64,000 nucleotides of DNA, taken from assembly GCF_052425735.1 (NCBI RefSeq), contig NC_135761.1:20336001-20400000 (forward strand), in the 5' to 3' direction. The translations under genes were made by a program, and so were the position numbers. Below the pieces are notes generated by a model. The model searched no databases and had not been told where the DNA came from. It saw nothing but the letters and a program-made list of their open reading frames with translations. Source of the DNA: Oculina patagonica. Lineage: Eukaryota. Shown here piece by piece: positions 10,737-64,000 of this stretch (positions are counted from its first letter, which is position 1; every line of letters begins with the position of its first letter).

Positions 10737-13332
10737 TTATGCTATGCCAAAACACTTTAGTTTTCCCAGAGTATGGTAACCTTGCTCGCTACTACCCCCT
10801 GTATCTCCAAACCTGAGCTGTTTAACTGGAAGATGTGTCTTGTCAGTCAAGAGACCGCTGTCTTCACGCCATACATAGTTATTTGCATCACAGTTACAAC
10901 CTCGACTGGAGACTGCACATGAGTTGGTCATCCCGCATGCGCACTTACCACTGCCAGGTGATGCTCCGCCCCAGTACGTCATCTTAGTAGAATCACGTGA
11001 CACCCACCAGGCATCACTCCCTATCACTGAACCATAACACTCGTACTTGATAAACTGTTCACAGTGTGTGGAGACTCTGGTGAGACTCGCTAGCTGGGAC
11101 AGGCTTGCTCCTGTATAATGAATGTTACGTGAGTAACAACCTTGAGGTTCACATCCGTCCACGTGCGTTCTGCTCTCACTGTCGTGACTTATCACTGTCA
11201 CGCCAACTCCATTCTTGTCACTCATGTCACAGTAAACTAAAAATGGTGCCAGGCCTCCTGCGCCATCCGGATCAATGAGGTAATTTCCGCTTACAGTGCT
11301 GACGTGTTTTCTGGTTACAGAACACGATGTTGCAATAACTGGGGAATTGATTTTGACCTTGGCTTCTATTATTGACAAAGCATTAGTCGCTCTACAGGTG
11401 TAAGATCCTTCGTGTGATTTCTTCACGTTGTGAATTAAAAGTGTTCCATTCGGTAGAAAACTTGAGTCAGCAGAAAGTGAAGACTGTCCATCTTTCTTCC
11501 ATGTGATTGTAGTTCTCAGGTCACTCTCGGCCACACACGATAGATAAACCGTTGCAAACATACTGGGAGTCACCTCTTTAGGAGGACGGACTTTAAAACG
11601 TAGAGGAGGAAATACCGTCAGTTGAGCAGTGTCTGTTACTGATCCAAGAATATTCTCCGCTTTACAAATGTATAGTCCACCGTCCTTTCTTGTCACACTG
11701 TAGATTGTCAGCGTTCCATTCAACATTTCTGTTCTGACTTCAGGTAAACTGTCAACTGCTCTGGACCACGTGATACCGGGAAGCGGCTGGCCAGTAGCAG
11801 TGCAGGCGATGGTAACGTCTTGTTTTTCTTCAGCAATCAATCGATTAGAAGATAATAAAAGTGTAGGAGCGACTGTTGAGAAACAAGGAAATTTTATTCT
11901 TTGGGAAACATATGGCGAATGCACTGAACTAAATAAGGTTTCATTCTATATACTCTTCCGACAAGAAAATTATCTTTCTGAAAAACGACTGAATTGATAT
12001 TTTGGATTAATAAAGTGCTTGAGTAACGGTTTTCATTTTGCCCTCAACTGGCCTTAACCCCAAAACGCCATCTTAACAAAGGGCCTGTTTTTCAGGATCA
12101 ACCACAACTACTCGGCACTAAATATCTTAATTATACAACTTACACTGGACAGTTAATTTCGCCGAGGCGTTCACTTGTCCCAGCAAATTTTCAGCTTTGC
12201 ACCTGTAAACTCCTTCGTCTCCACGTCTAACGTTTTTGACAATCAGAGCGCCACTGGACTCTACCACGTGACGACCTACAGGAAGCGATGAACTGAGCTT
12301 AGCCCACGTGACCTTTGGACTTGGATTTCCATCCGCTGTACATTTCAAGATGGTTGTCTGACTTTCATTGACTGTCGTTTCAACAGGACTCTGCAGCAGG
12401 GATGGAGCCGAGATGGACTGGCCTGGCTCCCCCTTGTTACCTTTCATACCCGGTGGACCTCTAGGTCCTACCGTACCTGGGTCGCCCGGCACTCCGACAT
12501 CCCCCTTTATGCCCATCGGCCCTTGAACTCCTATTGGTCCATGTTTACCGGGAGGTCCGTTTGTCCCGGGTCTTCCTGGGGGACCTGGCTTCCCTCGGGT
12601 TCCCGCTCTTCTGCGTCGTCCCGTGTTACCTTTTGGTCCTGTGCGGCAGAGCGTCTGATCTTTAGCACAGACTTGGTCTTGCAACAGTCCAAATTCTTGT
12701 TTGATCAGTACTTGTACTTCAGAAGCTGTTAGGGTTGATTTCTGTTGTGAATCATCCGTCGAAGAGCGTTTCTGTCTTGAGATTGTCTCTTGTTCACCTT
12801 TGAAATTAAAGTTATTTGTTTAACATCGTACACTGTGAACCATTCTTTGACATTCAGCGGTTGGTATGATGCAACATATTCAGCCTATTTCCGCTTTTAT
12901 TTGTCAATGTAAATTACTGACTTAAATCATAGCTCTGCTCTGTGAGAATAGGGCATAACAATGTACTCTTTTTAATTATTGTATCTATTCGTGTTAGGTA
13001 AACCATTCCAATAAAAACATGTTCCTCTGTGAAAATCTTGAAAATCTCAGTAACGTAACTATTAACATACCTTTGGAGGCTTGCCAATGGCGGCCTGAAG
13101 TCAAAACATGCCGTCTTTCGTAATTTTGTTGTACTTTTCGAAGGATTTCTGTCTCCATCCTATCACAGAATGTTACTGAGTGTGATATCAGTCGATAATG
13201 TTCTTGTATTCTGAGTTCCACGTGAATTAGCGCGATACAACACACAACAGACAACAGCAAGCCTGACGCGGAACACAAGCGGTGCAGTGTTTGTTTTCTC
13301 TTCGTCTGATTCTTTTCTTTGTTTTGTTTCAT
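10737..13332 (-). CDS. Copy 2 of the CniFL-like gene, 683 aa; exons 13071-13332, 12144-12797, 10737-11872
   Basis: Same splice sites and phases as copy 1, open frame. One collagen Gly is replaced by Arg (GRR-RRA-GTR). Confidence 0.9.
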
Positions 13333-16385: not shown

Positions 16386-19144
16386 CTATGCTATGCCATA
16401 GCACTTTAGTTTTCCCAGCGTGTGGTAACCTTGCTCGTCATTTTCACCTATATCTCCAAACCTGAGCTGTTTAACTGGAAGATGTGTCTTGTCAGTGAGG
16501 AGACCGCTGTCTTCACGCCATACATCGTCATTGTTATCACAGTTACAATTACGACCATTTACACATGAGTTGGTCATCCCGCATGTGCACTTACCACTTC
16601 CAGGTGATGCTCCGCCCCAGTATTTCATCTTAGTAGAGTCACGTGACACCCACCAGGCATGGTCAGGTTCGTACCTGAATATCGCTGATGCATAGCACTC
16701 GTACTTGATAAACTGTTCACAGTGTGAGGAGACTCTGGTAAGACTCGTTAGCTGGGACAAGCTTGTTCCTGTGTAATGAATATCACGTGAATAACAACCA
16801 GAATCTTCGCATCCATGCACGTGCATTCTGCTCTCACTGTCGTGACTTATCACTGTCACGCCAACTCCGTTCTTGTCACTCATATCACAGTAAACTGTAA
16901 ATGGTGCCAGGCCTCCTTCGCCATCCGGATCAATGACGTAATTTCCACTTACAGTGCTGACGTGTTTTCTGATCACAGAACACGAAGGCGCAACCACTTT
17001 GACTTTGACTTTGGCTTCTATTGTTGACAGAGCATTGGTTGCTTTGCAGGTGTAAGATCCTTCAAGTGATTTCTTGATGTTATGAATCAGCAGTGTTTGA
17101 TTTTGTAGAACATTGGACTCTACAGGAAGTGAAGACTTACCATCCTTTGTCCAAGTGATTGTAGTTCTCAGGTCACTCTCGGCCACACATGGTAGGTGAA
17201 CACTTAGTCCAATCAAAGGAGTCACCTCTTGAGGAGGACGGACTTTGAACCGCAGAGGTGGAAATACCACGACTAGAGCAGTGTCTATTGCTGATCCAAG
17301 AATATTCTCCGCTTTACAAATATATAGTCCACCGTCCTTTCTTGTCACACTGTTGATTGTCAGAGTTCCATTCACCACATCAGTTCTGTCCTTAGGCAAA
17401 CTACCCCCTGCTCTAGACCACGTGATGCTGGGAAGCGGCTGACCAGTAGCACTGCAGGCAATGCGGACGTTCTGTTTCTCCTCAGCAATCAATCGGTTGG
17501 ATGACAATAATAGTTTGGGAGCGACTATCGAGAAAAAAAGGAGAAATATATATTTTCATGGGGTGAAACAATGGCGAATGCACCTTACTGGATGAATTTT
17601 TATGCAATATTTTCTTTATATACAATTTATAGATCTTTTTATGCTTGTTAAATTATAGCCGGTCATGTGCAGGTTCTTTCAGATTTAAATTTTATGGGAT
17701 GAAGCAACACCTGATAAGAAAAGTTTTTCTCTTAAATACGACTTCATAGTTTGGATGAAAGTACTTCTGAAGTTGCGTTATCTTTTCATATTTCGCATCG
17801 GCTAAAACAACGACTTTTTACCCCAAAAGACCTATCTTTACACTGCAAAGGGCTTCTTTTCCAGCATCATCCACAAGTATTTGCCACTAAATATCTAAAT
17901 TATATGAAAACTTACACTGGACAGTTAATTTTGCCGAGGCGATCACTTGTCCCAGTAAATTTTCAGCTTTGCAGCTGTAAACTCCTTCGTCTCCAGGTCT
18001 AACGTCCTTCACAATCAGAGCGTCACTGGACTCTACCACGTGACGACCAACAGTAAGCGTTGAATTGCGCTTCGACCACGTGACTTTTGGAGTTGGGTAA
18101 CCATCCGCTGTACACTTCAAGATGGCCGTCTGACTTTCATTGACTGTCATTCCAACAGGACGCTGCAGCAGAGAAGGAGCCGAGATGGACTGTCCTGGCT
18201 CCCCCTTGTTACCTTTCATACTCGTCGGGCCTCTAGGTCCCACGGGACCTGGATCGCCAGGAACTCCTATATCCCCCTTTATGCCCATGGGTCCTTGAAC
18301 ACCTATTGGTCCATGTTTTCCTGGAGATCCGTTTGTCCCGTGTCTCCCTGGGGGGCCTGGCTTCCCTCGGGTTCCCGGTCTTCCTCGTCGTCCCGTGTTG
18401 CCTTTTGGTCCTGTACGGCAGAGCGTGTAATCTTTAGCACAGACTTGGTATTGCAGCAGCCCGAGTTCTTGTTTGATCAGTACTTGTACATCAGAGGCGG
18501 TAAGGGTTGATTTTTGTTGTGAATCATCGGACGAAGAGCGTTTCTGTCTTGAGATGGTCTCCTGTTCACCTTTGAAATTAAAGTTATTTTTTAACATCGT
18601 ACACTGTGAACCATTCTTTGACATTCAGCGGTTGGTATGAAGCAACCTATTTCCGCTTTGATTTGTCACTGTGTGCCTAACTGACTTAGATACTAGCTAG
18701 CTCTCCTCTGGGAGAATAGCGCCATATCAATGTTCTCTTTTAAAATTGTAACTATTCGTGTTAGAAAAACCATTCCACAAAAAGCATGTTCCTTCGTGGA
18801 CAGTAGGCGCACCAGAACAACTGACAAATTACACAAGAACCTATGCTCCTGAAAATCTAAGTAACGTAACTTAACACACCTTTGGCCGCTTGCCAATGGC
18901 GGCCTGTAGTCATAGCATTCCATCTTTCGTAATTTTGTTGTACTTTTCGCAGGAGTTTTGTCTCCATCTTATCACAGAATATTACTGAGTGTGATATCAG
19001 TCGATGATGTTCTTGTATTCTGAGTTCCACGTGAATTAGCGCGACACAACACACAACAGACAACAGCAAACCCGACGCGGAACACAAGCGGTGCAGTGTT
19101 TGCTTTCTGTTCATCTGCTTCTTTTCTTTATCTTGGTGTTTCAT
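16386..19144 (-). CDS. Copy 3 of the CniFL-like gene, 685 aa; exons 18880-19144, 17916-18569, 16386-17524
   Basis: Conserved splice sites and open frame. Collagen Gly to Ser (GPT-SMK). Confidence 0.9.
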
Positions 19145-19814: not shown

Positions 19815-22719
19815 CTCCCATATAAACCTTTTGACAGTATTATTAAAGGGTCTCAAAGCGCAAGCGTGGTTGTGGAACGAAAAATCCGATGTCTCCATGT
19901 ACGAAAAAAAATTTCGAACAGGATTCCCTCTAATTCGTCGGTTTAAAAGAGTGAATAGAATATGTATGCACGTCCGTCGAAACAGTATGCTTGGAAGTGG
20001 ATTCGAACCCATTTTCCGTCGCACACTTAGATTCCTTGTGATTTTAGATCAAGCACGTATTCTGATCCACTTAAAGTAAAAACAGCTAGGGTCTATGTGT
20101 TCTCCTCACGTAAATAAATTTTCAGCGTGCTCATACGTCTTACCAGTGCCACACAAGAAATTAAAACGGTACAAGCCAATATAAAGGGTAAAATACATTG
20201 TGTAGCGTACAAGCGTCTTTGGTCAGTATAACAGCTTCATTAAATATACTTGGTAAAACACCAAAATGCAGGATTGTGATCGTATAAAATGTGTTCGTGG
20301 CGGCCATGTTGGAGAAGTGAAACAATAAAAGATATTTGTATAAAATGATTTTTTCCCAAAGGAAAATCAATCTATTGTTTCACTCCTCCAATATGGCCGT
20401 CATGAACGTACTCTACACACCAGTTTTTTCGAAGGTGTCACTTCACATTGCAATTATTTTTTACTTCATAGGCACTTAAACAAGGTAACTCCATCAGCTT
20501 TACAATTAAAACTATTATCGATAGATGCCCTGATAAAAAATAAAGAAATAAAATAATAAAAATAATGATAAAAATGAGACGTTTCGTAAGTGAGTCTCAT
20601 TGTAGTGAGGTTGCCATGACAGATCGTGTCCGTTGATGTATTTTGTTTAGCTCACCAATCCACCCAACCATGCGCCAAAGAGTACAAAAGCGTACTTCAC
20701 ATAACACCGTACTGCTATTAAATTAAACTGAAACTGTACAAGAAAAAGCGCCCAATATGTATTTTAGTTCTTTATTTCAAAATGCTTATTTTTTGCGATT
20801 ACATAATCTCGAAAAATGACTTTAATTTCGTGTTTTTGTAGAAAAATTATGCTAAAGGGAAGTAAGTACACGAAAAGTTTCCAACTAATTGCTGATCGAT
20901 ATAAAAAAGATAGTTTCAGAATCGGCGCTACAGATTCCAGTTTTACAAAGCAATTTTTATCCAAGCGATATTGAGCAAAACGATAACAAGACAAAACTAA
21001 AACAGGTTGGCATGTTCGTTTCCAACAAATCATGAAGTCGTACTAACGAGGTTAACGTTTATTAAGATATGTCTTTCCTCTGCTTCATGATATAACAATA
21101 ACTGAGGTACACTGTGATTGTTTACGAAGTTGTTATAAATTGCACATTTTTTTACTATGTGGCACAGAGTTTCTACCTTTTTTCGCTCTAATTATTAGGC
21201 ACAATTATTATCCTCGCTTGCTTCCATGCTTTTATGAACTATTTTTATTATTATCTTGCTTTCCTTATCATTATCTTCAGGTAATTGCAAAGTCACATTT
21301 ACATTTCAAACAAAACTGATTGTGATCATTGCAAATACTAAGTTTGGTGGTGATGTCAGTTCTTTTGAGAGTATCAAAAGGATACTCGAATTTTTATGCT
21401 ATGCCATGGCATTTAAGTTTTCCCAGGGTATGATAACCTTGCTCGCCGCTATCGCCTATATCGCCAAACCTGAGCTGTTTAACTGGAAGATGTGTCTTGT
21501 CATTGAGGAGACCGCTGTCTTCACGCCATACCTTGTCATTCTTATCACAGTTGCAACCATACCTGGAGTCTGCACATGAGTTGGTCATCCCGCATGCGCA
21601 CTTACCACTGCCAGGTGATGCTCCGCCCCAGTAATTCATCTTAGTAGAATCACGTGAGAACCACCAGGCGTGCCCATACAAGACAATCGTTGAAGCATGA
21701 CACTCGTACTTGATAAACTGTTCACAATGCGAGGAGACTCTTGTGAGACTCGCCAGCTGAGACAGACTCGATCCAGTGTAGTGTATGTCACGCCAGTAAC
21801 AACCATCAGGGTTACATCCCCGCACGTGTGTTCTGCTCTCACTGTCATGACTTATTACTGTCACGCCAACTCCATTCTTGTCACTCATGTCACAGTAAAC
21901 TGAAAATGGTGCCAGGCCTCCCGAGCCATCTGGATCAATGACGTAATTTTGGCTTTCACTGGTGGCGTATTTTCTGATCACAGAACAAGAAGTCGCAACA
22001 ACCGGGGAATTGATTTTGACTTTGATCCCTCGTGTGATTTCTTGATGTTCTGAATAAGCACCGTTCCATTCTGTAGAACTTTGGACTCTACAGGAAGTGA
22101 AGTCTTGCCATCCTTTGACCAAATTACTGTGGGTCTCAGGTCGCTCTCGGCCACACACGGTAAGCGAATTGCATGTCCAATCACAGGAGTCACCTCTTGA
22201 GGAGGACGGACTTTAAAATGCAGACGAGAAAATATTACCAGTTGAGCAGTGTCTGTTACTGATCCCAGAATATTCTCAGCTTTACAAATGTATAGTCCAC
22301 CATCCTTTCTTGTCACACTGTAGATTGTCAGCGTTCCATTCATCACTTCTGATCTGTCTTCATTTTTACCCCCCGCTCTGGACCACGTGATCCTGGGAAG
22401 CGGCTGACCAGCAGCCGTGCAGCTGATTGTAAAGTTTTGTTTTTCTTCGGCAATCAATCGATTGGATGATAATAGAAGTGTAGGAGCGACTGTCGAGGAA
22501 CAAAAAAAAGAATTTTATTCTTTGGGAAAACATATGGCGAATGTACTTTACAGAACAAGAACATTGAGAAGCTTGAGAAGCTTAAAATCGGGCGCTTTGC
22601 CTTGAAAGGCAGGGTTCAGTACAGCAGAAACCACGAAGCAGTTACTTAAGTAGCACTCAGTCCGACTGTGTTTGTGTAAGTCACAGGGCTTGCATGAGCT
22701 GTATTAGTGTGCATAATAT

Positions 22720-36775: not shown

Positions 36776-39480
36776 TTATGCTTTGCCATAGCACTTAAGT
36801 TTTCCCAGCGTATGGTAACCTTGCTCGTAATCGGATATATCTCCAAACCTGAGCTGTTTAACTGGAAGATGTGTCTTGTTAGTAAGGAGACCGCTGTCTT
36901 CACGCCATACCTTGTCATTTTTATCACAGTTACAACTTTGACTGGGGTTTGCACATGAGTTGGTCATGCCGCATGCGCACTTTCCACTGCCAGGTGATGC
37001 CCCGCCCCAGTAATTCATCTTAGTAGAATCACGTGACACCCACCAGGAAAATCCGCTTCTGAAAATCATTGCCTCGTAGCACTCGTACTTGATAAACTGT
37101 TCACAGTGTGAGGAGACTCTGGTAAGACTCGCTAGCTGGGACAGACTCGCTCCTGTATAATGAATGTCACGTGAATAACAACCAGAAACTTCGCATCCAT
37201 GCACGTGTGTTCTGCTTTCACTGTCGTGACTTATCACCGTCACGCCAACTCCATTCTTGTCACTCATGTCACAGTAAACTGTAAATGGTGCCAGGCCTCC
37301 TGTGCGATCCGGATCAATGACGTAATTTCCGCTTACACTGGTGACGTATTTTCTTATCACAGAACAAGAAGTCGCTACTGGGGAATTGATTTTGACTTTG
37401 GCTTCTATTGTTGACAGAGCATTAGTCGCTTTACAGGTGTAAGATCCTTCGTGTGATTTCTTGATGTTCTGAATCAGCAGTGTTCCGTTCTGTAGAACAC
37501 TGGACTCTACAGGAAGTGAAGACTTGCCATCCTTTTTCCAAGTTATTGAAGCTCTCGGGTCACTCTCGACGACACACAACAGATGAAGACTTAAGCCAAT
37601 CACAGGAGTTACCTCTTGAGGAGGACGGACTTTGAAACGCAGAGGCAAAAATATCATGACTACAGCAGCGTTAGTTGCTGATCCCAGAATATTCTTTGCT
37701 TTACAAATGTATAGTCCAGCGTCCTTTCTTGTCACACTGTTGATTGTCAGGGTTCCATTCACCACATCAGTTCTGTCCTTAGGCAAACTACCTACTGCTC
37801 TGGACCACGTGATACTAGGAAGCGGCTGACCAGTAGCACTGCAGGCGATGCGGACGTTTCGTTCCTCCTCAGCAATCAATCGGTTGGATGACAATGATAG
37901 TTTAGGAGCAACTATCGAAAAAAGAGAAAAATATATTAGGGGTCAAACAATGGCGAATGCAATGTACCATATGAATTTTTTTCCACTTTTTCCTTAATAT
38001 TCAAATTAATAGATCTTTTTACGCTGGTTAAATTATAGCCTGTCATGTGCAGGTTCGTTCCGATTTAAAATTTCATGGGATGAAGCAACCCCTGATGAGA
38101 AAAGTTTCTCTCTTAAATACGACTTCATAGTTTGGATGAAAGTGCTTCTGAAGTTGCGTTATCTTTTCATATTTCGCATCAGCTAAAACAACGACTTTTT
38201 ACCCCAAAAGACCTATCTTTACACTGCAAAGGGCTTCTTTTCCAGCATCATCCACAACTTCTCGCCAATAAATATCTAAATTATGTGAAAACTTACACTG
38301 GACAGTTAATTTCGCCGAGGCGTTCACTTGTCCCAGCAAATTTTCAGCTTTGCAGCTGTAATCTCCTTCGTCTCCAGGTCTAACGTCCTTCACAATCAGA
38401 GCACCACTGGACTCTACCACGTGACGACCTACAGGTAGCCGTGAATTGTCCCTTGACCAAGTAACTTTTGGTGTTGGATTACCATCCGTTGTACATTTTA
38501 AGATGACTGTCTGACTTTCATTGACTGTCATTCCAAATGGGCGCTGCAGCAGAGATGGAGCCGAGATGGACTGGCCCGGCTCCCCCTTGTTACCTTTCAT
38601 ACCCGTCGGGCCTCTAGGTCCCACGGGACCGGGATCGCCAGGCACTCCGACATCCCCCTTTATGCCCATCGTTCCTTGAGCTCCTATTGGCCCATGTTTA
38701 CCGGGAGGTCCGTTTGACCCAGGTCTCCCTGGGGTGCCTGGTCTTCCTCGGGTTCCCGGTTTTCCTCGTCGTCCCGCGTTACCTTTTGGTCCTGTGCGGC
38801 AGAGCGTGTGATCTTTAGCGCAGACTTGGTTTTGCAACAGACCAAGTTCTTGTTTTATCAGTACTTGTACTTCAGAGGCGGTAAGGGTTGATTTATGTTG
38901 TGAATCATCGGGCGAAGAGCGTTTCTGTCTTGAGATGGTCTCCTGTTCACCTGTAAAATTAAAGTTATTTGTTTTACATCGTACACTGTGAACCATTCTT
39001 TGACATTCTGCAGTTGGTATGAAGCAACATATTTACTTCCGTTTTATTTGTTAATGTGAATTACTGATTTTAATCATAGCTCTTCTCTGGGAGAAAAAGG
39101 GCATATCCTTGTACTCTTTTTAGTTATTGTATCTATTTGTGTTAGGTAAACCATTCCAATAAAAACATGTTCCTGTGTGGAAATCTTGAAAATCTCAGTA
39201 ACCTAACTATTAACATACCTTTGGAGGCTTGCCAATGGCGGCCTGAAGTCAAAACATGCCGTCTTTCGTAATTCTGTTGTACTTTTCGAAGGATTTCTGT
39301 CTCCATCCTATCACAGAATGTGACTGAGTGTGATATCAGTCGATGATGTTCTTGTATTCTGAGTTCCACGTGAATTAGCGCGATACAACACACAACAGAC
39401 AACAGCAAGCCTGACGCGGAAAACAAGCGCTGCAGTGTTTGTCTTCTGTTCGTCTGATTCTTTTCTTTGTTTTGTTTCAT
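36776..39480 (-). CDS. Copy 5 of the CniFL-like gene, 683 aa; exons 39219-39480, 38297-38950, 36776-37911
   Basis: Conserved splice sites, open frame, all domains present. Confidence 0.9.
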
Positions 39481-41657: not shown

Positions 41658-44364
41658 CTATGCTATGCCATAGCACTTTAGTTTTCCCAGCGTGTGGTAA
41701 CCTTGCTCGTCATTTTCACCTATATCTCCAAACCTGAGCTGTTTAACTGGAAGATGTGTCTTGTCAGAGAGGAGACCGCTGTCTTCACGCCATACATCGT
41801 CATTGTTATCACAGTTACAATTACGACCATTTACACATGAGTTGGTCATCCCGCATGCGCACTTACCACTTCCAGGTGATGCTCCGCCCCAGTATTTCAT
41901 CTTAGTAGAGTCACGTGACACCCACCAGGCATGGTCAGGTTCGTACCTGAATATCGCTGATGCATAGCACTCGTACTTGATAAACTGTTCACAGTGTGAG
42001 GAGACTCTGGTAAGACTCGTTAGCTGGGACAAACTTGTTCCTGTGTAATGAATATCACGTGAATAACAACCAGAATCTTCGCATCCATGCACGTGCATTC
42101 TGCTCTCACTGTCGTGACTTATCACTGTCACGCCAACTCCGTTCTTGTCACTCATATCACAGTAAACTGTAAATGGTGCCAAGCCTCCTTCGCCATCCGG
42201 ATCAATGACGTAATTTCCACTTACAGTGCTGACGTGTTTTCTGATCACAGAACACGAAGGCGCAACCACTTTGACTTTGACTTTGGCTTCTATTGTTGAC
42301 AGAGCATTGGTTGCTTTGCAGGTGTAAGATCCTTCAAGTGATTTCTTGATGTTATGAATCAGCAATGTTTGATTTTGTAGAACATTGGACTCTACAGGAA
42401 GTGAAGACTTACCATCCTTTGTCCAAGTGATTGTAGTTCTCAGGTCACTCTCGGCCACACATGGCAGGTGAACACTAAGTCCAATCAAAGGAGTCACCTC
42501 TTGAGGAGGACGGACTTTGAACCGCAGAGGTGGAAATACCACGACTAGAGCAGTGTCTGTTGCTAATCCAAGAATATTCTCCGCTTTACAAATATATAGT
42601 CCACCGTCCTTTCTTGTCACACTGTTGATTGTCAGAGTTCCATTCACCACATCAGTTCTGTCCTTAGGCAAACTACCCCCTGCTCTAGACCACGTGATAC
42701 TGGGAAGCGGCTGACCAGTAGCACTGCAGGCAATGCGGACGTTCTGTTTCTCCTCAGCAATCAATCGGTTGGATGACAATAATAGTTTGGGAGCGACTAT
42801 CGAGAAAAAAAGGAGAAATATATATTTTCATGGGGTGAAACAATGGCGAATGCACCTTACTGGATGAATTTTTATGCAATATTTCCTTTATATACAATTT
42901 ATAAATCTTTTTATGCTTGTTAAATTATAGCCGGTCATGTGCAGGTTCTTTCAGATTTAAATTTTATGGGATGAAGCAACACCTGATAAGAAAGATTTTT
43001 CTCTTAAATACGATTTCATAGTTTGGATGAAAGTACTTCTGAAGTTGCGTTATCTTTTCATATTTCGTATCAGCTAAAACAACGACTTTTACACCAAAAA
43101 GACCTATCTTTACACTACAAAGAGCTTCTTTTCCAGCATCATCCACAACTTCTCGCCAATAAATATCTAAATTATGTGAAAACTTACACTGGACAGTTAA
43201 TTTCGCCGAGGCGTTCACTTGTCCCAGCAAATTTTCAGCTTTGCAGCTGTAATCTCCTTCGTCTCCAGGTCTAACGTTCTTCACAATCAGAGCACCACTG
43301 GACTCTACCACGTGACGACCTACAGGTAGCCGTGAGTTGTACCTTGACCAAGTAACTTTTGGTGTTGGATTACCATCCGGTGTACATTTTAAGATGACTG
43401 TCTGGCTTTCATTGACTGTCATTCCAACTGGGCGCTGCAACAGAGATGGAGCCGAGATGGACTGTCCTGGCTCCCCCTTGTTACCTTTCATACCCGGCGG
43501 GCCTCTAGGTCCCACGGGACCTGGATCGCCAGGCACTCCGAAATCCCCCTTTATGCCCATCGGTCCTTGAGCTCCTATTGGTCCATGTTTACCGGGAGGT
43601 CCGTTTGACCCTGGTCTCCCTGGGGGACCTGGTCTCCCTCGGGTTCCCGGTTTTCCTCGTCGTCCCGTGTTACCTTTTGGTCCTGTGCGGCAGAGCGTGT
43701 GATCTTTGGCACAAACTTGGTTTTGCAACAGACCAAGTTCTTGTTTTATCAGTACTTGTACTTCAGAGGCGGTAAGGGTTGATTTATGTTGTGAATCATC
43801 GGGCGAAGAGCGTTTCTGTCTTGAGATGGTCTCCTGTTCACCTGTAAATTTTAAATAATTTGTTTTACATCGTACACTGTCTGTGAACCATTCTTTGACA
43901 TTCAGCGGTTGAAATGATGCAACCTATTTCCGCTTTTATTTGTCAATAAATGGACTAAAATCATAGCTCTTTTCTGTGAGAATAGGGCATAATACTCTTT
44001 TTAATTATTGTATCTATTCGTGTGAGGAAAACCATTCCGCTAAAAACATGTTCCTGTGTGAAAATCTTAAAAATCTCAGTAACGTAACTATTAACATACC
44101 TTTCGTCGCTTGCCAATGGCGGCCTGTAACCATAGCATGCCATCTTTTGTAATTTTGTTGTACTTTTCGAAGGATTCCGGGCTCCATCTTATCACAGAAT
44201 GTTACTGAGTGTGATATCAGTCGATGATGTTCTTGTATTCTGAGTTCCACGTGAATAAGCGCGATACAACACACAACAGACATCAGCAAACCTGACGCGG
44301 AACACAAGCGGTGCAGTGTTTGCCTTCTGTTCATCTGCTTCGTTTCTTTATCTTGGTGTTTCAT
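41658..44364 (-). CDS. Copy 6 of the CniFL-like gene, 685 aa; exons 44100-44364, 43188-43841, 41658-42796
   Basis: Conserved splice sites. The exon 3 product differs from copy 3 at only 4 residues. Confidence 0.9.
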
Positions 44365-46747: not shown

Positions 46748-49700
46748 TTATGCTATGCCATAGCATTTAAGTTTTCCCAGGGTATGGTAACCTTGCTCGC
46801 CACTATCCCCTGTATCGCCAAACCTGAGCTGTTTAACTGGAAGATGTGTCTTGTCAGTGAGCAGACCGCTGTCCTCACGCCATACACCGTCATTTGCATC
46901 ACAGTTACAAGCCGGATAACTGGGGTTTGCACATGAGTTGGTCATCCCGCATGCGCACTTACCACTGCCAGGTGATGCTCCGCCCCAGTAATTCATCTTA
47001 GTAGAATCACGTGACACCCACCAGGCATATTGTAACGTTGAATCAAAGCACTCGTACTTAATAAACTGTTCACAGTGTGAGGAGACTCCGGTGAGACTTG
47101 CCAACTGAGACAGGCTTGCTCCTGTGTAGTGAATGTCACGTGAGTAACAACCTTGAGATTCACATCCCCGCACGTGTGTTCTGCTCTCACTGTCGTGACT
47201 TATTACTGTCACGCCAACTCCACTCTTGTCATTCATGTCACAGTAAACTGAAAATGGTGCTAGGCCTCCTGCGCCATCTGGATCAATGACGCAAGTTTCG
47301 CTTACACTGGTGGTGTATTTTCTGATCACAGAACAAGAAGTCGCAATAACTGGAGAATTGATTTTGACTTTGGCTTCTATTGTTGACAGAGCATTAGTTG
47401 CTTTACAGGTGTAAGATCCCTCGTGTGATTTCTTGATGTTCTGAATAAGCACCGTTCCATTCTGTAGAACTTTGGACTCTACAGGAAGTGAAGTCTTGCC
47501 ATCCTTTGACCAAATTACTGTGGGTCTCAGGTCGCTCTCGGCCACACACGGTAAGCGAATTGCATGTCCAAACACAGGAGTCACCTCTTGAGGAGGACGG
47601 ACTTTAAAATGCAGACGAGAAAATATTACCAGTTGAGCAGTGTCTGTTACTGATCCCAGAATATTCTCTGCTTTACAAATGTATAGTCCACCATCCTTTC
47701 TTGCCACACTGTTGATTGTCAGGGTTCCATTCATCACTTCTGATCTGTCTTCATTTTTACCCCCTGCTCTGGACCACGTGATCCTGGGAAGCGGCTGACC
47801 AGCAGCAGTGCAGGCGATGGTAACGTTTTGTTTTTCTTCGGCAATCACTCGATTGGATGATAATAGAAGTGTAGGAGCGACTGTTGAGAAAAAAAAAAAT
47901 AATTTTATTCTTTGAGAAAACAGCTGGCGAATGCACTTTACTAAATAAGGTTTTATTCTAACACATGCATAGGTTATTAGGAAAGATTTTATAAATGTTA
48001 TTTTCCTTTTAAATTCTATCTCATTAATCTCATTATACTCGTTAAATTGTAGCCTATCTTGAGCAGGTTCGTTTTGATTAAAAAAAAACCCTCTTCCGAA
48101 AAGAAAAATATCTTTCTGTAAAACGACTTAATTAATATTTTGGATTATTTATCAAGTGCTTGTGCAATTTCTTTTTGCGATGTTTCGCACCAGCTCTAAC
48201 AAGACCCTCGACTGACCTTTATAGCAAAACAAAAAACATCTTAACGATACGTACGATAGGTCTGTTTTTCAGCATCAACCACAGTTACTAAATATCTCAA
48301 TTATTACACAACTTACACTGTACAGTTAATTTCGCCGAGGCGTTCACTTGTCCCAGCAAATTTTCAGCTTTGCAGCTGTAAACTCCGTCGTCTCCAGGTC
48401 TAACGTCCTTGACAATCAAAGCGCCACTGGCTTCTACCACGTGACGACCCACAGGAAGTGATGAATTGATTTTCGACCACGTGACTTTTGGAGTTGGATT
48501 ACCATCCGCTGTACATTTTAAGATGCCCGTCTGACTTTCATTGACTGTTGTTCCAACAGGACGCTGCAGCAGAGATGGAGCCGAGATGGACCTGCCCGGT
48601 TCACCCCTGTCGCCTTTTATACCCGGCGGGCCTCTAAGTCCCATGGGACCGGGCTCTCCCGCCACTCCGACATCCCCCTTTATGCCCATCGGTCCTCGAG
48701 GACCTATTGGTCCATGTTTACCGGGAGGTCCGTTTGACCCGGGTCTCCCTGGAGGACCTGGTCTCCCTCTAGGTCCCGGTCTTCCTCGTCTTCCCGTGTT
48801 ACCTTTTGGTCCTGGGCGGCAGAGCGTGTGATCTTTAGCACAGACTTGGTTTTGCAGCAGACCAAATTCGTGTTGAATCAGCAGTCGAACTTCAGAGGCC
48901 GTTAGGGTTGATTTCTTTTGTGAATCATCGGGTGAAGAGCGTTTTTGTCTTGTGATGGTCTCCTCTTTACCTGGAAATTTAAAGCGTTTATAATATGGCT
49001 GAATCCACGTGCAAGAAATATATCTTATTAACCACGCGCGAGGGCCGTACTGGGCGAATATTGGCCCGAGGTCTTGACAGTACGGATCGAGCGCAGCGAG
49101 GTCCGTACAAAAAGACCGAGGGCCAATAAACGCCCAGTACGGTCCCGAGCAAGCTTGGTTAATAAGAGATTTATTACACGACTGGAAACTTTGGGTAGTG
49201 AGAATTGCTACCCGGTAGATGTTGTGGAAAAAAAATGTGCGGCAAAACTTTTTCGCACGCTAAAAGAGTTATAATTATTTCTGTGGTTAGTTCATTTCAT
49301 TTTCAAAGCAATGAAAACTTCGAAAAACTCTTGCAAAAAAATCTAGCAAAAATCTTGTGCTAAATCGCGCGGGAATTAGCGCGGGATCATCCGGGACAAA
49401 ACCCGGTCCGATACTTGGAAAATATCGGCCCTCGCGGGACCGGAAATAAAGTAATCTGATTGGCTGATTTAGTTATTGGCCCTCGGACCGCCTTAGTCGT
49501 GTAATAAGTGCCCGTATTGCCCGTTCGGGATTTCCCGGGTCCGTCCCACCAAAAAATTTTGTTTTTTGGCCATATAATAAATCCTTTATTGACCAAGCTT
49601 GTTGGTCAAGATGGCTTTATGTTGGCCTCGTTCCTTTTTCTGCTTTTATTGACTTCGACTTCGCGTCAGACCATAAAACACAAAAAAGCATTTGGCCAAT

Positions 49701-51234: not shown

Positions 51235-54200
51235 TTATGCTACGCCATAGCACTTAAGTTTTCCAACGGTATGATAACCTTGCTCGTGACCGTATATATC
51301 TCCAAACCTAAGCTGTTTAACTGGAAGATGTGTCTTGTCAGTGAGCAGACCGCTGTCTTCGCGCCATTCACCGTCATTCTTATCACAGTTACAACCATAA
51401 CTGGAGTCTGCACATGAGTTGGTCATCCCGCATGCGCACTTACCACTGCCAGGCGATGCTCCGCCCCAGTACGTCATCTTAGTAGTGTCACGTGACACCC
51501 ACCAGGCCTGTCCCCATCGAAACATCACTGAATTATAACACTCGTACTTAATAAACTGTTCACAGTGTAAGGAGACCCTGGTAAGACTTGCCAGCTGAGA
51601 CAGGCTTGCTCCTGTATAGTGAATGTCACGTGAATAACAACCCGCGGAGTCACATCCGTTCACGTGCGTTCTGGTCTCACTGTCATGACTTATTACTGTC
51701 ACGCCGACTCCATTCTTGTCACTCATGTCACAATAAACTGTAAATGGTGCCAGGCCTCCTGCGCCATCCGGATCAATGACGTAATTTCCGCTTACACTGG
51801 TGACGAATTTTCTGATCACAGAACAAGAAGTCGCAATAACTGGAGAATTGATTTTTACTTTAGCTTCTATTGTTGACAGAGCATTAGTTGCTTTACAGGT
51901 GTAATATCCTTCGTGTGATTTCTTGATGTTCTGAATCAGCAGTGTTTGATTTTGTAGAACATTGGACTCTACAGGAAGTGAAGACTTGCCATCCTTTGTC
52001 CAAGTGATTGTAGTTCTCAGGTCACTCTCGGCAACACAGGGCAGGTGGAGGTTTGAACTAATCACAGGAGTCACCTCTTGAGGAGGACGGACTTTAAAAC
52101 GCAGAGGAGGAAATACCATCAGTTGAGCAGTGTCAGTTGCTGATCCCAGAATATTCGTAGCTTTACAAACGTATATTCCACCGTCTACTCTTGTCACACT
52201 GTAGATTGTCAGCGCTCCATTCACCACTTTATTTCTGTCTTCAGGCAAACTACCTACTGCCTTTGACCACGTGATACTGGGAAGCGGCTGACCAGTAACA
52301 CTGCAGGCAATGCGGATGTTTTGTTTCTCCTCAGCAATCAATCGGTTGGATGACAATGATAGTTTAGGAGCGACTATCGAAAAACAAGATAAATATATAT
52401 CTTCAGGGGTCAAACAATGGCGAATGCAATTTTTAAATGAAATTTTATCGAATTGTTCCTTTATTATCAATAACAATTTTATATAGATCTTTTCAGTTGA
52501 TTTCAGTTTTCTTTGGCCACTCGCTTTGCGAAGTTTGTTGGGAATTTGGAAACTTCGTTACGAAGTTGCCAATTACATTGCGAGTTCGCGAATCAAGTTG
52601 CGAACTTCGATACAAAGTTCCCAACTTCGGCCCGACTGAACTTCCCAAGTTTGGTAGTTGAAGAAGAACTAGACATGTTGTAAGTTTTTTATTGACGTCG
52701 GTATATTTGTTCAAACAAGTATTTTTCAACTTGAGCTGCAAGAGTGTCGCTGGGATATTCCCACCACAACCTTGCTTCCTTTAAAATTATTGAGTTCAGA
52801 TCGCCATGACTTCCGAGCAGCATGTCTTGTTTCTCCTCAACTAGGAAACTTGCGAAGGTTATTCGGGTCGAGGTTGGGAACTTTGTATCGAAGTTCGCAA
52901 TTTGATTCGCAAACTCGAAACGTAATTGCCAACGAACTTCGCAAAGCGGGCGGCCAAAGTAAACGGAAATCAACTGTAATGCTGGTTAAATTGTAGCCTG
53001 ACATGTGCAGGCTCGTTCCGATTTAAATTTCATGGGATGAAGCAACCCCTGATAAGAAAAGTTTCTCTATTAAATAGTCTAAATACGACTTCATAGTTTG
53101 GATACAATAAGTGCTTCTGCAGTTGCGTTTTCTTTTCATATTTTGCATCGGCTAAAACAAGGACCTTTACACCAAAAAGACCTATGTTTACAAACGGCTT
53201 CTTTTCAAGCATCAACCGCAACTACTCGCCACTAAATATCTAAGTTATATGGAAACTTACACTGGACAGTTAATTTCGCCGAGGCGTTCACTTGTCCCAG
53301 CAAATTTTCAGCTTTGCAGCTGTAATCTCCTTCGTCTCCAGGTCTAACGTCCTTCACAATCAGAGCACCACTGGACTCTACCACGTGACGACCTACAGGC
53401 AGCCGTAAATTGTCCCTTGACCACGTAACTTTCGGCGTTGGATTTCCATCCGTTGTACATTTTAAGATGGCTGTCTGACTTTCGTTGACTGTCATTCCAA
53501 CAGGACGCTGTAGCAGAGATGGAGCCGAGATGGACTGGCCTGGCTCGCCCTTGTTACCTTTCATACCTGGCGGGCCTCTAGGTCCCACGGGACCGGGATC
53601 GCCAGGCACTCCGACATCCCCCTTTATGCCCATCGGTCCTAGAGATCCTATTGGTCCATGTTTACCAGGAGGTCCGTCTGACCCGGGTCTTCCTGGGGGA
53701 CCTGGTCTCCCTCGGGTTCCTGGTTTTCCTCGTCGTCCCGTGTTACCTTTTGGTCCTGTGCGGCAGAGCGTGTGATCTTTAGCACAGAGTTGGTTTTGCA
53801 GCAGACCAAGTTCTTGTTTGATCAGTACTTGTACTTCAGAAGCGGTTAGGGTTGATTTCTGTTGTGAATCATCGGGCGAAGAGCGTTTCTGTCTTGAGAT
53901 GGTCTCCTGTTCACCTGCAAAATTATAGTTAGTTTATATTATTATCGTACACTCTTTCAACCCTTCTTTGACGTTGAGCAGTTGGTATGATGCGACGTAT
54001 TTCCGCTTTGATTTGTCAATGTGACTAACTGACTTCGATCCTAGCTCTCCTCTGGGAGAATAGGGGCCCCCTGGGGGACTCGCATATCAAAGGGACGGGG
54101 ATGCTCGTCGGAAATTTTGAAAAAAACCCTAAAAGAGACCAATCTGGGTGTGGCTAAAGCTATTCTTGACCCCTAAAAGATACCAAAAAACTAAGAATAG

Positions 54201-61467: not shown

Positions 61468-62478
61468 TGAATTCTTGTACAAAGAGATCTTATTGTACAT
61501 GAATAAAGGTTAGTTTTTCATGGGAGAGATTGATGTATTTTTCAGAATATAGTATTTTCATTGGTTAAGTTATAATTAGAAATCCAGATTAACTTTTGGT
61601 TCGTTTACCTTGAGGAATATAATGCGAGAATAAAAGGTTACTTTTGAAATGTAAAATCTATTCTCGCTGCATAATTAATTAGCTCATAGCAGAAGTTTTA
61701 ATTATATGCTCGAATTCCTTTGTTTTGGCGCATGCTTGTTGCAGTGTTGATGCTTTGCGGTCTAAGGGTATAAATCCTGTCATTTCGCTTGAAACGTTGT
61801 CTAAGGGTATAAATCCTGTCGTTGGTCTAAGGGTATAAATCCTGTCATTTCGCTTGAAACGTTGTCATTTTAACGGTACTCCGGCACGACGGCCAACTTT
61901 CGCGACGCACCCACCTCCCCTGGTGGCAGTTGACAGAATTTCATGTTTTATCCTCATTGCATGCCTATTGCCTCAGCAGTCGCGAACTCTTCCCATAACT
62001 TAATCTTATGCGATGAGGTAATGAGTATGCAGTGAGGATTTTATACTGTTCCATTCGCTCATGGAATTTTTAGGAAATTCAAACCAGAATTTTTGTCGGA
62101 TGGAAAGCGCCCAGAGTTTTTGCCTGTTACGTAAATATATTTTCAGCACGCTATTAGAGATGCATACCCGTGCCATGGAAAGAAAGTTCAAGCCAGTGCA
62201 AATGGTTATAGCGTGTAAGCGTTTTTGCTCGATGCAACATGACTCTAAATATACTTTGTAGAATACAAAAAATACAGGAAGAAACGCCTTTCATTTTCTT
62301 GATTTGTAACTGATTTTTTCACATTCGTCGCTCGGATTATCCTCGCTTGTTTTTATGCCAGTAATCGTATTGCTATTCGTATTAACATATTACAAGGCTA
62401 AAAGCATATTTTAATAATAAAAAGATGCTGTTCGTATTGTATTACTTTCTTGGGAGTACTTAAATGATATTTGAATGT

Positions 62479-63623
62479 TTATGCTATGCCATAACACTTA
62501 AGTTTTCCCAGAGTATGGTAACCTTGCTCGCTGCTACCGCCTGTATCTCCAAACCTGAGCTGTTTAACCGGAAGATGTGTCTTGTCAGTGAGGATACCGC
62601 TGTCTTCACGCCACACACCGTCATTTGCATCACAGTTACACGGACGACTGGGGTTTGCACATGAGTTGGTCATCCGGCATGCGCACTTTCCACTGCTAGA
62701 TGATGCTCCGCCCCAGTACGTCATCTTAGTAGAGTCTCGTGACACCCACCAGGCACGCCATCCCATTTCAAAGATCACTGAATCATAACACTCGTACTTA
62801 ATAAACTGTTCACAGTGTGAGGATACTCTAGTGAGACTTACCAGCTGGGACAGACTCGCTCCAGTGTAATGAATGTCACGCGAATAACAACCATGATCTT
62901 CACATCCGTCCACGTGCATTCTGCTCTCACTGTCGTGACTTATTACTGTCACGCCGACTCCATTCTTGTCACTCATGTCACAATAAACTGTAAATGGTGC
63001 CAGGCCTCCTGCGCCATCCGGATCAATGACGTAATTTCCGCTTACACTGGTGGCGTATTTTCTGATCACAGAACAAGAAGTCGCAATAACTGGAGAATTG
63101 ATTTTTACTTTAGCTTCTATTGTTTACAGAGCATTAGTTGCTTTACAGGTGTAATATCCTTCGTGTGATTTCTTGATGTTCTGAATCAGCAATGTTTCAT
63201 TCTGTAGAACATTGGACTCTACAGGAAGTGAAGACTTGCCATCCTTTGTCCAAGTGATTGTAGTTCTCAGGGCACTCTCGGCCACGCAGGGCAGGTGGAG
63301 GTTTGAACTAATCACAGGAGTCACCTCTTGAGGAGGACGGACTTTAAAACGCAGAGGAGGAAATACCATCAGTTGAGCAGTGTCAGTTGCAGATCCTAGA
63401 ATATTCGTAGCTTTACAAACGTATATTCCACCGTCTACTCTTGTCACACTGTTGATTGTCAGCGCTCCATTCACCACTACAGTTCTGTCTTGAGGCAAAC
63501 TGCCAACTGCTCTGGACCACGTGATACTGGGAAGCGGCTGACCAGTAGCACTGCAGGTGATGCGGACATTTTGTTTCTCCTCAGCAATCAGTCGGTTGGA
63601 TGACAATGATAGTTTAGGAGCGA
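62479..63623 (-). pseudogene. Copy 9, exon 3 only (exons 1-2 lie beyond the window), with a premature stop
   Basis: TAG acceptor at 63624-63626. TCA>TAA at 63124-63126 at the end of Ig3, and the conserved [10 protein letters not shown] is changed to SSSSGKCACR. Confidence 0.8.
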
Positions 63624-64000
63624 CTATCGAGAACAAAGAGAAAAATATATCTTCAGGGGTCAAACAATGACAAATGCACTTTACTATATGACACTTTATC
63701 CAATTGTTCCTTCATATTCAAATTTATTTTTAATACTGGTTAAATTATAGCCGGTCATGTAGTTTTATTTTGATTTAAATTTCATGGGATGAAGCAACCC
63801 CTGATAAAAAAAAAGTTTCTCCCTTAAATACGACTTCATAGTTTGGATGCAATAAAATGCTTCTGAAGTAACGTTTTCTTTTTCTATTTTGCATGAGCTA
63901 AAACAACGACTTTTACACCAAAAAGACCTATCTTTACACTGCAAAGGGATTCTATTCCAGCATCAACCACAACTACTCGCCACTAAATATCTAAATTATA

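What the first reader, a model, noticed from the sequence alone, without database searches (positions are those of the whole stretch)
62479..62930. Variable loops are shuffled between paralogues like cassettes
Copy 9 combines loop A of copy 1 (DGCEDHG), loop D of copy 2 (TGGSSEQ) and a copy 7-like loop C ([14 protein letters not shown]) with a unique loop B. Copy 4 has loop C of copy 1 (ADSRYG), DKNDKVW of copy 5 and a copy 7-like loop D. Copies 4/7 and 8/9 share near-identical Ig regions but have different heads. Inference: short-tract gene conversion between conserved frameworks produces combinatorial diversity, and pseudogenes may act as donors.
Basis: partly seen in the sequence, partly recalled or inferred. 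Interest (0 to 1): 0.85.

Follow-up and report, generated by a model that had tools for sequence, protein, structure and literature searches.

The report
Coral receptor genes swap short segments
A stony coral carries a very large family of neighbouring receptor-like genes whose variable tips have been reshuffled in the germline by copying short DNA stretches between copies, a well-known way to diversify gene families that has not been described for this coral family.

Summary

No single tree explains the mosaic. Segment trees conflict and AU tests reject most cross-segment topologies. Synonymous divergence jumps 6- to 18-fold within one exon in the sister pairs. Copy 9's two non-coding flanks belong to other paralogue types than its c8-type middle.

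Across 51 family members, a copying-model test gives z = -20, against 0.3 +/- 1 for tree-like simulations. Distances between loop-bearing segments are mostly uncorrelated. Recent sister copies differ by 38-92 bp tracts that match third copies exactly.

The best explanation is germline gene conversion between paralogues, on top of segmental duplication.

Three parts of the reading are not supported:
- Loops are not discrete cassettes. Breakpoints fall inside them, and in copy 9 loop D, and plausibly loop A, ride on blocks of several hundred bp.
- Pseudogene donors are not shown. The two events whose direction can be inferred have intact donors.
- Somatic shuffling could not be tested.

The genes encode type II membrane collagen + 3 Ig + Caspr-type fibrinogen-like head proteins (CniFL-like), with at least 150 copies. 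The scan holds the same unfollowed note on this stretch (s1-293978).

The parts
62479..63069 (-). Copy 9 head ORF (Caspr-type fibrinogen-like domain). The finding's stretch 62479-62930 lies inside it.
63124..63126 (-). Premature TAA in copy 9, where the other copies have TCA. It lies between Ig3 and the head, inside the c8-type tract.
63127..63663 (-). Copy 9 Ig2-Ig3 part of the same exon.
62913..63483 (-). c8-type tract in copy 9, about exon nt 115-685. It is 95-100% identical to c8, with dS 0.02-0.12.
62881..62910 (-). Copy 9 loop A core, c1-type: 1 mismatch at 24 polymorphic sites. It may be the tail of the c1/c8-type tract.
62617..62716 (-). Copy 9 loop C region, c7-like: 8 mismatches at 59 polymorphic sites.
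62240..62589 (-). c2-type 3' block of copy 9: loop D, the C-terminus and about 240 bp of 3' flank. The flank is 91-95% identical to c2 and 33-68% to every other window copy.
63735..63934 (-). Copy 9 upstream intron, c3/c5/c6-type (85-90% identical) and not c8-type (42-45%). It bounds the c8-type tract on the 5' side.
11332..11423 (-). Conversion tract in copy 2: a 92-bp exact identity with c1. It holds 20 of the 24 differing alignment columns between c2 and its near-identical duplicate c13.
4296..4387 (-). Copy 1 counterpart of that tract, the inferred donor. It lies at the end of Ig3 and in the linker.
21488..21984 (-). Copy 4 head island, 82-92% identical to its sister c7. Both sides are 94-100% identical (3' flank about 95.5%, Ig 94-100%).
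21508..21572 (-). Copy 4 loop C tract (approximate coordinates). It has 0 mismatches at 41 polymorphic sites to ADSRYG-type copies L039 and L003, and 95-100% identity per 60-nt window to L054 over nt 895-1014.
22012..22034 (-). Junction of the 43-bp frameshifting deletion that makes copy 4 a pseudogene.
3698..4870 (-). Copy 1, Ig2-Ig3-head exon, intact.
10737..11924 (-). Copy 2 exon, intact. It is the 3' exon of the annotated 683-aa protein P0005.
16386..17507 (-). Copy 3 exon, 99% identical to c6 and 98% to c14.
36776..37894 (-). Copy 5 exon.
41658..42779 (-). Copy 6 exon, a recent duplicate of c3.
46748..47848 (-). Copy 7 exon, sister of c4 through a segmental duplication of about 25 kb.
51235..52476 (-). 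Copy 8 exon, intact. It is the inferred donor of the c8-type tract in c9.

Best explanation
The window holds nine of fourteen tandem genes of a family with at least 150 members in a stony coral. The genome is very probably Oculina patagonica. Each gene encodes a type II membrane anchor, a furin-type RQKR motif, a coiled coil, a collagen stalk, three Ig domains and a C-terminal Caspr-type fibrinogen-like head with four variable loops.

The array grew by segmental duplication: c3-c4 gave c6-c7, c2-c3 gave c13-c14, and c1-c2 matches c8-c9. Since then, non-reciprocal germline exchange between misaligned paralogues (interlocus gene conversion, with some unequal crossing-over) has copied tracts of about 20-200 bp, and occasionally about 600 bp, from one copy into another. 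Because variable loops sit between conserved framework, repeated exchange has reassorted loop variants until head segments are nearly independent of one another. The result is a combinatorial germline repertoire.

Shown here: the mosaic structure, tracts bounded on both sides, conflicting genealogies including at synonymous and non-coding sites, and presence of the copy 9 junctions in an independent data set.

Inferred: the molecular mechanism (conversion), the direction of single events, and that selection on a recognition function keeps the diversity.
For: Conflict among window copies:
- Whole-exon PHI z = -10, and z = -4 at third positions.
- Pairwise fragments c4-c7 nt 49-541, c8-c9 nt 119-658 and c1-c9 nt 208-744 are each significant at Bonferroni 0.006.
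- Five segment trees conflict, and AU tests reject 18 of 20 cross-segment topologies. The clades {c1,c9} (79%) and (c2,c13,c9) (81%) replace (c8,c9) (96-97%).

Synonymous divergence:
- c4/c7: dS is 0.049 in Ig (the non-coding flank differs by 4.5%) against 0.281 in the distal-head framework.
- c8/c9: dS is 0.023-0.12 against 0.416.
- dN/dS is about 0.1 in the framework and 0.65-1.17 in the loops.

Non-coding flanks:
- c9's 3' flank is c2-type (91-95% identical), against 33-68% for the other copies.
- c9's upstream intron is c3/c5/c6-type (85-90%), against 42-45% for c8. The c8-type tract is therefore bounded on both sides.

Clean recent tracts:
- c2 against c13: 20 of 24 differing columns lie in 53 bp, where c2 equals c1. 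The exact identity runs 92 bp.
- L044 loop D matches L024 at 22/22 sites in 66 bp.
- L041/L043 differ mainly by three loop tracts, one matching L040 at 15/15.
- L003/L005 have 6 of their 9 differences in 38 bp.

Family-wide tests:
- The copying-model test on 51 heads gives z = -21.6, and -8.1 at framework third positions.
- Fourteen tree-like simulations with the same site rates give 0.27 +/- 0.99.
- Segment-distance correlations are about 0, against 0.35-0.49 in simulations.

Independent data: contigs of run X2, from another study with the same species label, carry 62572-62722 and 62837-63003 with no difference.
Against: - Within the head of the eight window copies alone, the signal is weak. 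PHI gives p = 0.037 and is not significant at third positions. No pairwise fragment survives correction.
- For c9, c4 and c7 taken singly, the third-position copying test is not significant.
- PHI on 51 heads is saturated and not significant for all sites.
- The tracts shared by c9 with c1, c2 and c7 are 92-97% identical, not 100%. These events are old and their donors cannot be named with certainty.
- The direction of most events is ambiguous, for example L003/L005.
- A published survey states that gene conversion is very rare in coral tandem arrays (PMC10236652). That survey looked for homogenisation rather than short diversifying tracts.
Confidence: 0.85

Rival explanations
1. Reciprocal unequal crossing-over alone, without conversion, made chimeric genes as the array expanded. 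The mosaics would then be junctions of duplication events.
For: - Segmental duplications of 25-74 kb are evident.
- The breakpoint of the 25-kb duplication lies in the intron of c2/c5. Their upstream parts are 92% identical while their Ig2-Ig3-head exons are 84% identical.
- c9's c2-type block runs into the flank.
Against: Many tracts are bounded on both sides by sequence of the recipient type, so each would need a double crossover:
- the 92-bp c1 tract inside c2, which is otherwise 99.6% identical to c13;
- the c8-type tract in c9, which lies between a c5-type intron and a c2-type 3' end;
- the c4/c7 head island between flanks that are 95-100% identical;
- the tracts in L044 and L041/L043.
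Confidence: 0.07
2. Tree-like descent with convergent or parallel amino-acid change in loops under diversifying selection. A variant is locally raised untemplated mutation in the head. Under either, shared loops are homoplasy.
For: - Loop dN/dS is 0.65-1.17.
- Homoplasy in the head is very high, and PHI is saturated.
- Some c4-specific singletons exist.
Against: - The signal persists at framework third positions (z = -8.1) and in non-coding flanks.
- dS in the conserved framework jumps 6- to 18-fold.
- c4 and c7 differ at all three positions of a codon in aa 278, 322 and 325, and both versions already exist in other copies.
- Tree-like simulations with the same spatial rate pattern give no signal.
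Confidence: 0.03
3. The array also serves as a donor library for programmed somatic gene conversion, as in chicken Ig or as proposed for snail FREPs. The germline mosaics would be a by-product.
For: Only circumstantial: a dense array of homologous donors, about 16-19% of copies carrying disabling lesions in this exon, and a putative recognition function.
Against: - Most copies are complete genes with their own 5' exons. There is no single acceptor with upstream pseudogene donors.
- Every combination seen is encoded in the germline assembly, and the c9 junctions recur unchanged in an independent run.
- No somatic data were available.
Confidence: 0.04
4. The mosaics are assembly chimeras in a repetitive array.
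For: Tandem arrays of copies 85-99% identical are hard to assemble.
Against: - Shared tracts are mostly 92-97% identical to their nearest relatives, not 100% as a mis-join would give.
- Independent contigs span the c9 junctions without a difference.
- The annotated protein P0005 of the public record equals c2.
Confidence: 0.01

Closest known systems
Cnidarian ficolin-like proteins (CniFL; defined from the Aiptasia genome and surveyed in sea anemones, PMC5094078)
   Same: Collagen stalk + three Ig domains + C-terminal fibrinogen-type head, often with a transmembrane segment. They are proposed as pattern-recognition receptors of a lectin-complement pathway. The collagen stalk carries a PGKHGP motif of the type that, from my own knowledge, binds MASP in mannose-binding lectin and ficolins (seen in the ORFs).
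   Different: - Anemones have 1-7 copies. This coral has at least 150 head copies in large tandem arrays.
- The head misses the Pfam Fibrinogen_C cut-off and is of the Caspr type.
- Hypervariable loops and conversion mosaics were not mentioned in the one CniFL survey I read (PMC5094078).
Biomphalaria FREPs (IgSF + fibrinogen-related domain)
   Same: Ig domains joined to a fibrinogen-type head, multigene loci, and diversification attributed to gene conversion plus point mutation. This rests on my knowledge of Zhang et al. 2004 and on PMC2935394, whose abstract I saw.
   Different: - FREP diversification was reported as somatic and centred on the IgSF exon.
- Here the evidence is germline only and the variable part is the head.
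- FREPs have no collagen stalk or membrane anchor.
Interlocus gene conversion in vertebrate MHC, KIR and Ig V arrays, and the mosaic 'element patterns' of sea urchin 185/333 (Trf) genes
   Same: Short tracts exchanged between tandem paralogues give patchwork variable regions on a conserved framework. Genealogies conflict along the gene.
   Different: The protein family and the phylum differ. No population or functional data exist here.
Chicken Ig light-chain diversification from pseudo-V donors
   Same: Templated short-tract copying from homologous neighbours.
   Different: That system is somatic and AID-dependent, with one functional acceptor and pseudogene donors. Here most copies are intact genes, and the events whose direction can be inferred have intact donors.
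Central fibrinogen-like domain of Caspr/CNTNAP, Neurexin IV, axotactin and nlr-1
   Same: The head superposes at TM 0.80-0.87 with 26-39% sequence identity over about 205 residues. The fibrillar procollagen C-propeptide is the next-nearest fold, at TM about 0.6.
   Different: In Caspr the domain is a single internal module of a neurexin-like adhesion protein. It is not a C-terminal hypervariable head on a collagen stalk.

Membership tests
CniFL (cnidarian ficolin-like protein) | Collagen triple-helix repeats (PF01391) | tested here: met
   PF01391 scores E 2e-13 in the upstream exon of c3 and 1e-13 in P0005, which is c2.
CniFL (cnidarian ficolin-like protein) | Ig domains between the collagen and the head, usually three | tested here: met
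   Three I-set stretches in P0005. One lies in the upstream exon and two in the last exon.
CniFL (cnidarian ficolin-like protein) | C-terminal Fibrinogen_C domain (PF00147), as used to define the family in PMC5094078 | tested here: inconclusive
   PF00147 scores 17.5 bits against a cut-off of 22, and COLFI 21.4 against 26.2. By fold, the head is the fibrinogen-like domain of Caspr at TM 0.87. It matches bona fide fibrinogen domains only at TM about 0.3.
CniFL (cnidarian ficolin-like protein) | Transmembrane segment, reported for most CniFLs | tested here: met
   A hydrophobic N-terminal anchor is read directly from P0005 and from ORF 49803-50270. No transmembrane predictor was run.
Interlocus (ectopic) gene conversion among tandem paralogues | Tracts of donor-type sequence bounded on both sides by recipient-type sequence | tested here: met
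   Seen in c2, in c9, in the c4/c7 island and in L044, L041/L043 and L037/L040.
Interlocus (ectopic) gene conversion among tandem paralogues | Conflicting genealogies along the gene, including at silent sites | tested here: met
   AU tests, dS by region, third-position copying test z = -8 and null simulations.
Interlocus (ectopic) gene conversion among tandem paralogues | Non-reciprocity: the donor stays unchanged | not testable with these tools
   This needs the pre-event state of the donor or pedigree data. Only parsimony from sister copies is available (c13 for c2).
Programmed somatic gene-conversion diversification (chicken Ig type) | One expressed acceptor gene with an array of pseudogene donors | tested here: not met
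   Seven of the nine window copies have an intact last exon, and upstream exons are seen for most copies. Two events whose direction can be inferred have intact donors.
Programmed somatic gene-conversion diversification (chicken Ig type) | New sequence combinations in somatic cells that are absent from the germline | not tested
   The runs laid on the stretch were short contigs, which cannot show rare variants.

The most novel reading that the evidence does not exclude
The four head loops form a combinatorial recognition code that the coral keeps close to linkage equilibrium across more than 150 genes. The same homology-driven conversion may also operate somatically, or at a programmed raised rate in the head. 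Each colony or cell lineage would then carry receptor variants beyond the germline set. That would make this a candidate for the unknown basis of coral self/non-self or symbiont discrimination.
Probability: 0.05. Interest if true: 0.95.

Novelty: new member of a known kind. Interest (0 to 1): 0.55.

Why it matters
Corals lack adaptive immunity, and the receptors behind their pathogen, symbiont and allogeneic discrimination are largely unknown. This work documents a membrane-anchored collagen-Ig-fibrinogen-like family with at least 150 copies in this coral. Its four variable loops have been reassorted by conversion into a germline combinatorial repertoire.

That gives a concrete, testable candidate recognition family. 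It also qualifies a published generalisation that gene conversion is very rare in coral tandem arrays (PMC10236652). Here conversion is short-tract and diversifying rather than homogenising, so a screen for homogenisation would not detect it.

The mechanism itself is classical. The value lies in the family, its scale and the cleanness of the recent events.

Tried and rejected
- PHI on the head of 51 copies was not significant for all sites (p about 0.3-0.6). Nearly all site pairs are incompatible, so the test is saturated. It reached only p = 0.01-0.04 at third positions. I replaced it with a copying-model test calibrated by simulation.
- A GENECONV-like scan restricted to the head of the eight window copies gave no fragment that survives Bonferroni correction.
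- A regex to pull the 3' flanks of c10-c14 found nothing, so the flank comparison covers c1-c9 only.
- The pseudogene-donor idea was examined on L003/L005 against the TGA-bearing L029/L030/L034. L003 matches L029 at 6/6 differing sites, but the middle of the tract does not, and L005 matches L048-type copies at 5/6. The direction is ambiguous, so I make no claim.
- The cassette idea, that breakpoints avoid loops, was rejected.
- The public runs laid on copy 9 were unitigs of 60-170 bp. They confirm two junctions but say nothing about the stop codon in other individuals, about expression, or about somatic variants.
- The original CniFL paper (PNAS 2015) is not held in the library.
- I did not try a head-trimer prediction, because no binding claim is made.

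Full report
WHAT IS IN THE WINDOW. The window is G000:C4:20336001-20400000 of a stony-coral genome. The contig length of 64,437,903 equals that of the Oculina patagonica record holding the homologues found. The annotated O. patagonica protein P0005 (683 aa) is the spliced product of copy 2. The species is therefore very probably O. patagonica.

Nine tandem genes lie on the minus strand. Each ends in one exon that encodes Ig2, Ig3 and a head of about 200 residues. An upstream exon encodes a coiled coil, collagen repeats and Ig1. A further exon encodes a hydrophobic N-terminal anchor (ORF 49803-50270 for c7; P0005 for c2), followed by an RQKR motif. I read the RQKR as a furin-type cleavage site from the motif alone; no cleavage predictor was run.

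The array continues beyond the window to 14 copies. The genome holds at least 150 scored head matches out of 279 candidates, in clusters on six or more contigs.

Pfam sees Collagen and three Ig domains. The head gives only sub-threshold Fibrinogen_C and COLFI hits. An AlphaFold model of the head (pLDDT 84) matches the fibrinogen-like domain of Caspr/CNTNAP/Neurexin IV at TM 0.80-0.87 and 26-39% identity. It matches procollagen C-propeptides at TM about 0.6 and true fibrinogen domains only at about 0.3. The architecture is that of the cnidarian ficolin-like proteins (CniFL), known at 1-7 copies in anemones.

THE OBSERVATION. c4/c7 and c8/c9 are 97.4% and 94.9% identical in the Ig part but 89.3% and 88.2% in the head. 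c4 carries a 43-bp frameshifting deletion. c9 carries a TAA at 63124-63126.

IS ONE TREE ENOUGH? It is not.
- PHI over the exon gives z = -10, and z = -4 at third positions.
- A GENECONV-like scan finds c4-c7 (nt 49-541), c8-c9 (nt 119-658) and c1-c9 (nt 208-744), each at Bonferroni 0.006.
- ML trees of five exon segments for 13 local copies conflict, and AU tests reject 18 of 20 cross-segment topologies.
- (c8,c9) has 96-97% support in the Ig segments. It is replaced by {c1,c9} (79%) in the mid-head and by (c2,c13,c9) (81%) in the distal head.

SELECTION OR GENEALOGY? Synonymous divergence answers this question.
- For c4/c7, dS is 0.049 in Ig. That equals the 4.5% divergence of their non-coding 3' flank. 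In the conserved framework of the distal head it is 0.281.
- For c8/c9, dS is 0.023-0.12 against 0.416.
- Framework dN/dS is about 0.1 and loop dN/dS is 0.65-1.17.
- A 6- to 18-fold jump in dS inside one exon, at sites under no diversifying selection, means the segments have different ancestries.
- c4 and c7 also differ at all three positions of codons 278, 322 and 325, and both versions already exist in other copies.

ANATOMY OF COPY 9.
- The 3' flank, about 240 bp past the stop, is 91-95% identical to c2's and 33-68% to all other copies. It shares a deletion of about 52 bp with c2.
- The upstream intron is 85-90% identical to c3/c5/c6 and unalignable with c8 (42-45%).
- Between them, exon nt ~115-685 is 95-100% c8.
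- The c8-type stretch is therefore a tract bounded on both sides, placed in a foreign locus. The donor is the intact c8 and the acceptor is c9.
- The nonsense codon lies inside the tract, and c8 has TCA at that position. The nonsense mutation therefore arose after the conversion.
- The copying-model path for the head is c8 | c14 | c1 (loop A) | L010 (poor match; loop B is unique) | c7 (loop C) | L018 | c13 = c2 (loop D).
- Loop D belongs to the c2-type block of at least 350 bp.
- Loop A may be the tail of a c1/c8-type tract. c1 and c8 are positional homologues, and c8's own loop A is unique.
- Contigs of an independent run carry 62572-62722 and 62837-63003 without a difference. The mosaic is therefore germline and not an assembly chimera.

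CLEAN RECENT TRACTS.
- c2 and c13 are near-identical duplicates. Of their 24 differing alignment columns, 20 lie in 53 bp at the Ig3/linker boundary, where c2 equals its neighbour c1. The exact identity is 92 bp, 4296-4387 = 11332-11423.
- c14 differs from c3/c6 by 7-8 changes within 18-36 bp of Ig2.
- In the sister cluster at 10.8-11.8 Mb of the same chromosome, L041/L043 differ mainly by three tracts. These cover loop B (19 differences in 57 bp), the distal part of loop C (5 in 16 bp) and loop D (15 in 64 bp, matching L040 at 15/15).
- L044's loop D equals L024 at 22/22 sites in 66 bp.
- L040's loop B is L026-like.
- L003/L005 are 0.9% apart and have 6 of their 9 differences in 38 bp at loop D.

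FAMILY-WIDE TESTS.
- I fitted a copying model in which each head is rebuilt from the other 50 non-redundant heads, with cost = mismatches + 2 per switch. It costs far less in the real site order than in permuted orders: z = -21.6 for all sites, -8.8 for third positions and -8.1 for framework third positions.
- Fourteen alignments simulated on the ML tree with the real spatial pattern of site rates give z = 0.27 +/- 0.99.
- Pairwise distances in different head segments are almost uncorrelated in the real data (r from -0.14 to 0.11 for most pairs; 0.30 for A-D and 0.46 for B-C). Simulations give 0.35-0.49.
- Inferred segments have a median of 91 bp (IQR 52-141), at about 5.5 per head.

WHAT IS NOT SUPPORTED.
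- Loops are not protected units. 37% of breakpoints fall inside loops, which hold 22% of the intervals. Tracts also occur in Ig2, Ig3 and the linker.
- Pseudogene donors are not shown. About 10-12 of 63 copies carry lesions in this exon. The two events whose direction can be inferred have intact donors, and the one candidate (L029 to L003) is ambiguous.
- Nothing here bears on somatic change.

COMPARISON AND NOVELTY. Conversion-driven patchwork diversity in tandem recognition-gene arrays is classical (MHC, KIR, Ig V, FREPs, 185/333). I found no description of it for this coral family in four full-text searches. A survey of coral tandem duplicates concluded that gene conversion is very rare (PMC10236652). 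That survey looked for homogenisation, which short diversifying tracts do not produce. I therefore class the finding as a new member of a known kind.

CAVEATS.
- My GENECONV-like and copying-model tests are home-made, although the copying-model test was calibrated by simulation.
- The simulated tree was itself estimated from recombinant data.
- Tract ends and donors for old events are approximate.
- Only 63 of about 279 copies were analysed.

Noticed in passing
window 24468-28940 (+): An intact 1490-aa ORF of an LTR-retrotransposon type: SCAN-like gag, zinc knuckle, integrase, then reverse transcriptase and RNase H. The integrase lies upstream of the RT. The ORF sits between copy 4 and the collagen-Ig1 exon at 33558-33965, possibly in the intron of the pseudogene c4.
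   Followed up: partly
L002, L003, L005, L011, L018, L024, L025, L048, L049, L053, L055, L057 (C4:10.8-11.35 Mb): In this cluster the head is a separate exon. In L003, L005 and L024, the three read in frame, a Cys-rich EGF-like stretch (..GDGFEC..) precedes it instead of Ig3. This is a second architecture for the same head. Conversion crosses the two architectures: the Ig-type L044 carries the loop D of the EGF-type L024 at 22/22 sites.
   Followed up: partly
loop A, head residues about 68-76 (table): Loop A comes in two classes, GC....GC and GY....GS. A likely disulphide is therefore present or absent as a pair. All 14 local-array copies have the Cys form. Many copies at 11 Mb have the Tyr/Ser form.
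   Followed up: no
L029, L030, L034 (C4:11054015, 11155121, 10923053): Three copies share an in-frame TGA that replaces the invariant Trp of TYWGGA, and an FSN in place of FGD. This is a pseudogene that was itself duplicated.
   Followed up: partly
window 12127-12684, 17887-18624, 38199-38996, 42964-43728 (-): The collagen stalks carry PGKHGP. From my own knowledge this fits the Hyp-Gly-Lys-X-Gly-Pro motif that binds MASP in mannose-binding lectin and ficolins. The scan also noted it as s1-294252.
   Followed up: partly
window 59349-60427: A long tandem repeat with unit offsets of 96, 144, 172 and 240 bp in self-BLAST. It yields long spurious ORFs on both strands.
   Followed up: no
window 54395-55116: A 723-bp stretch that matches its own reverse complement at 92%, a large palindrome. 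It lies upstream of copy 8's collagen exon.
   Followed up: no
head segments A (nt 676-745) and D (nt 1030-1110): Most head segments are uncorrelated, but loops A and D keep r = 0.30 and loops B and C keep r = 0.46. This could reflect co-conversion or structural coupling of the loops.
   Followed up: no
L008 (c14, C4:20426070-20426657): c14 appears to have a 5-bp rather than a 6-bp deletion in the linker relative to other copies (one extra C compared with c3/c6). That would shift the frame, so c14 is possibly a third pseudogene in the local array.
   Followed up: no
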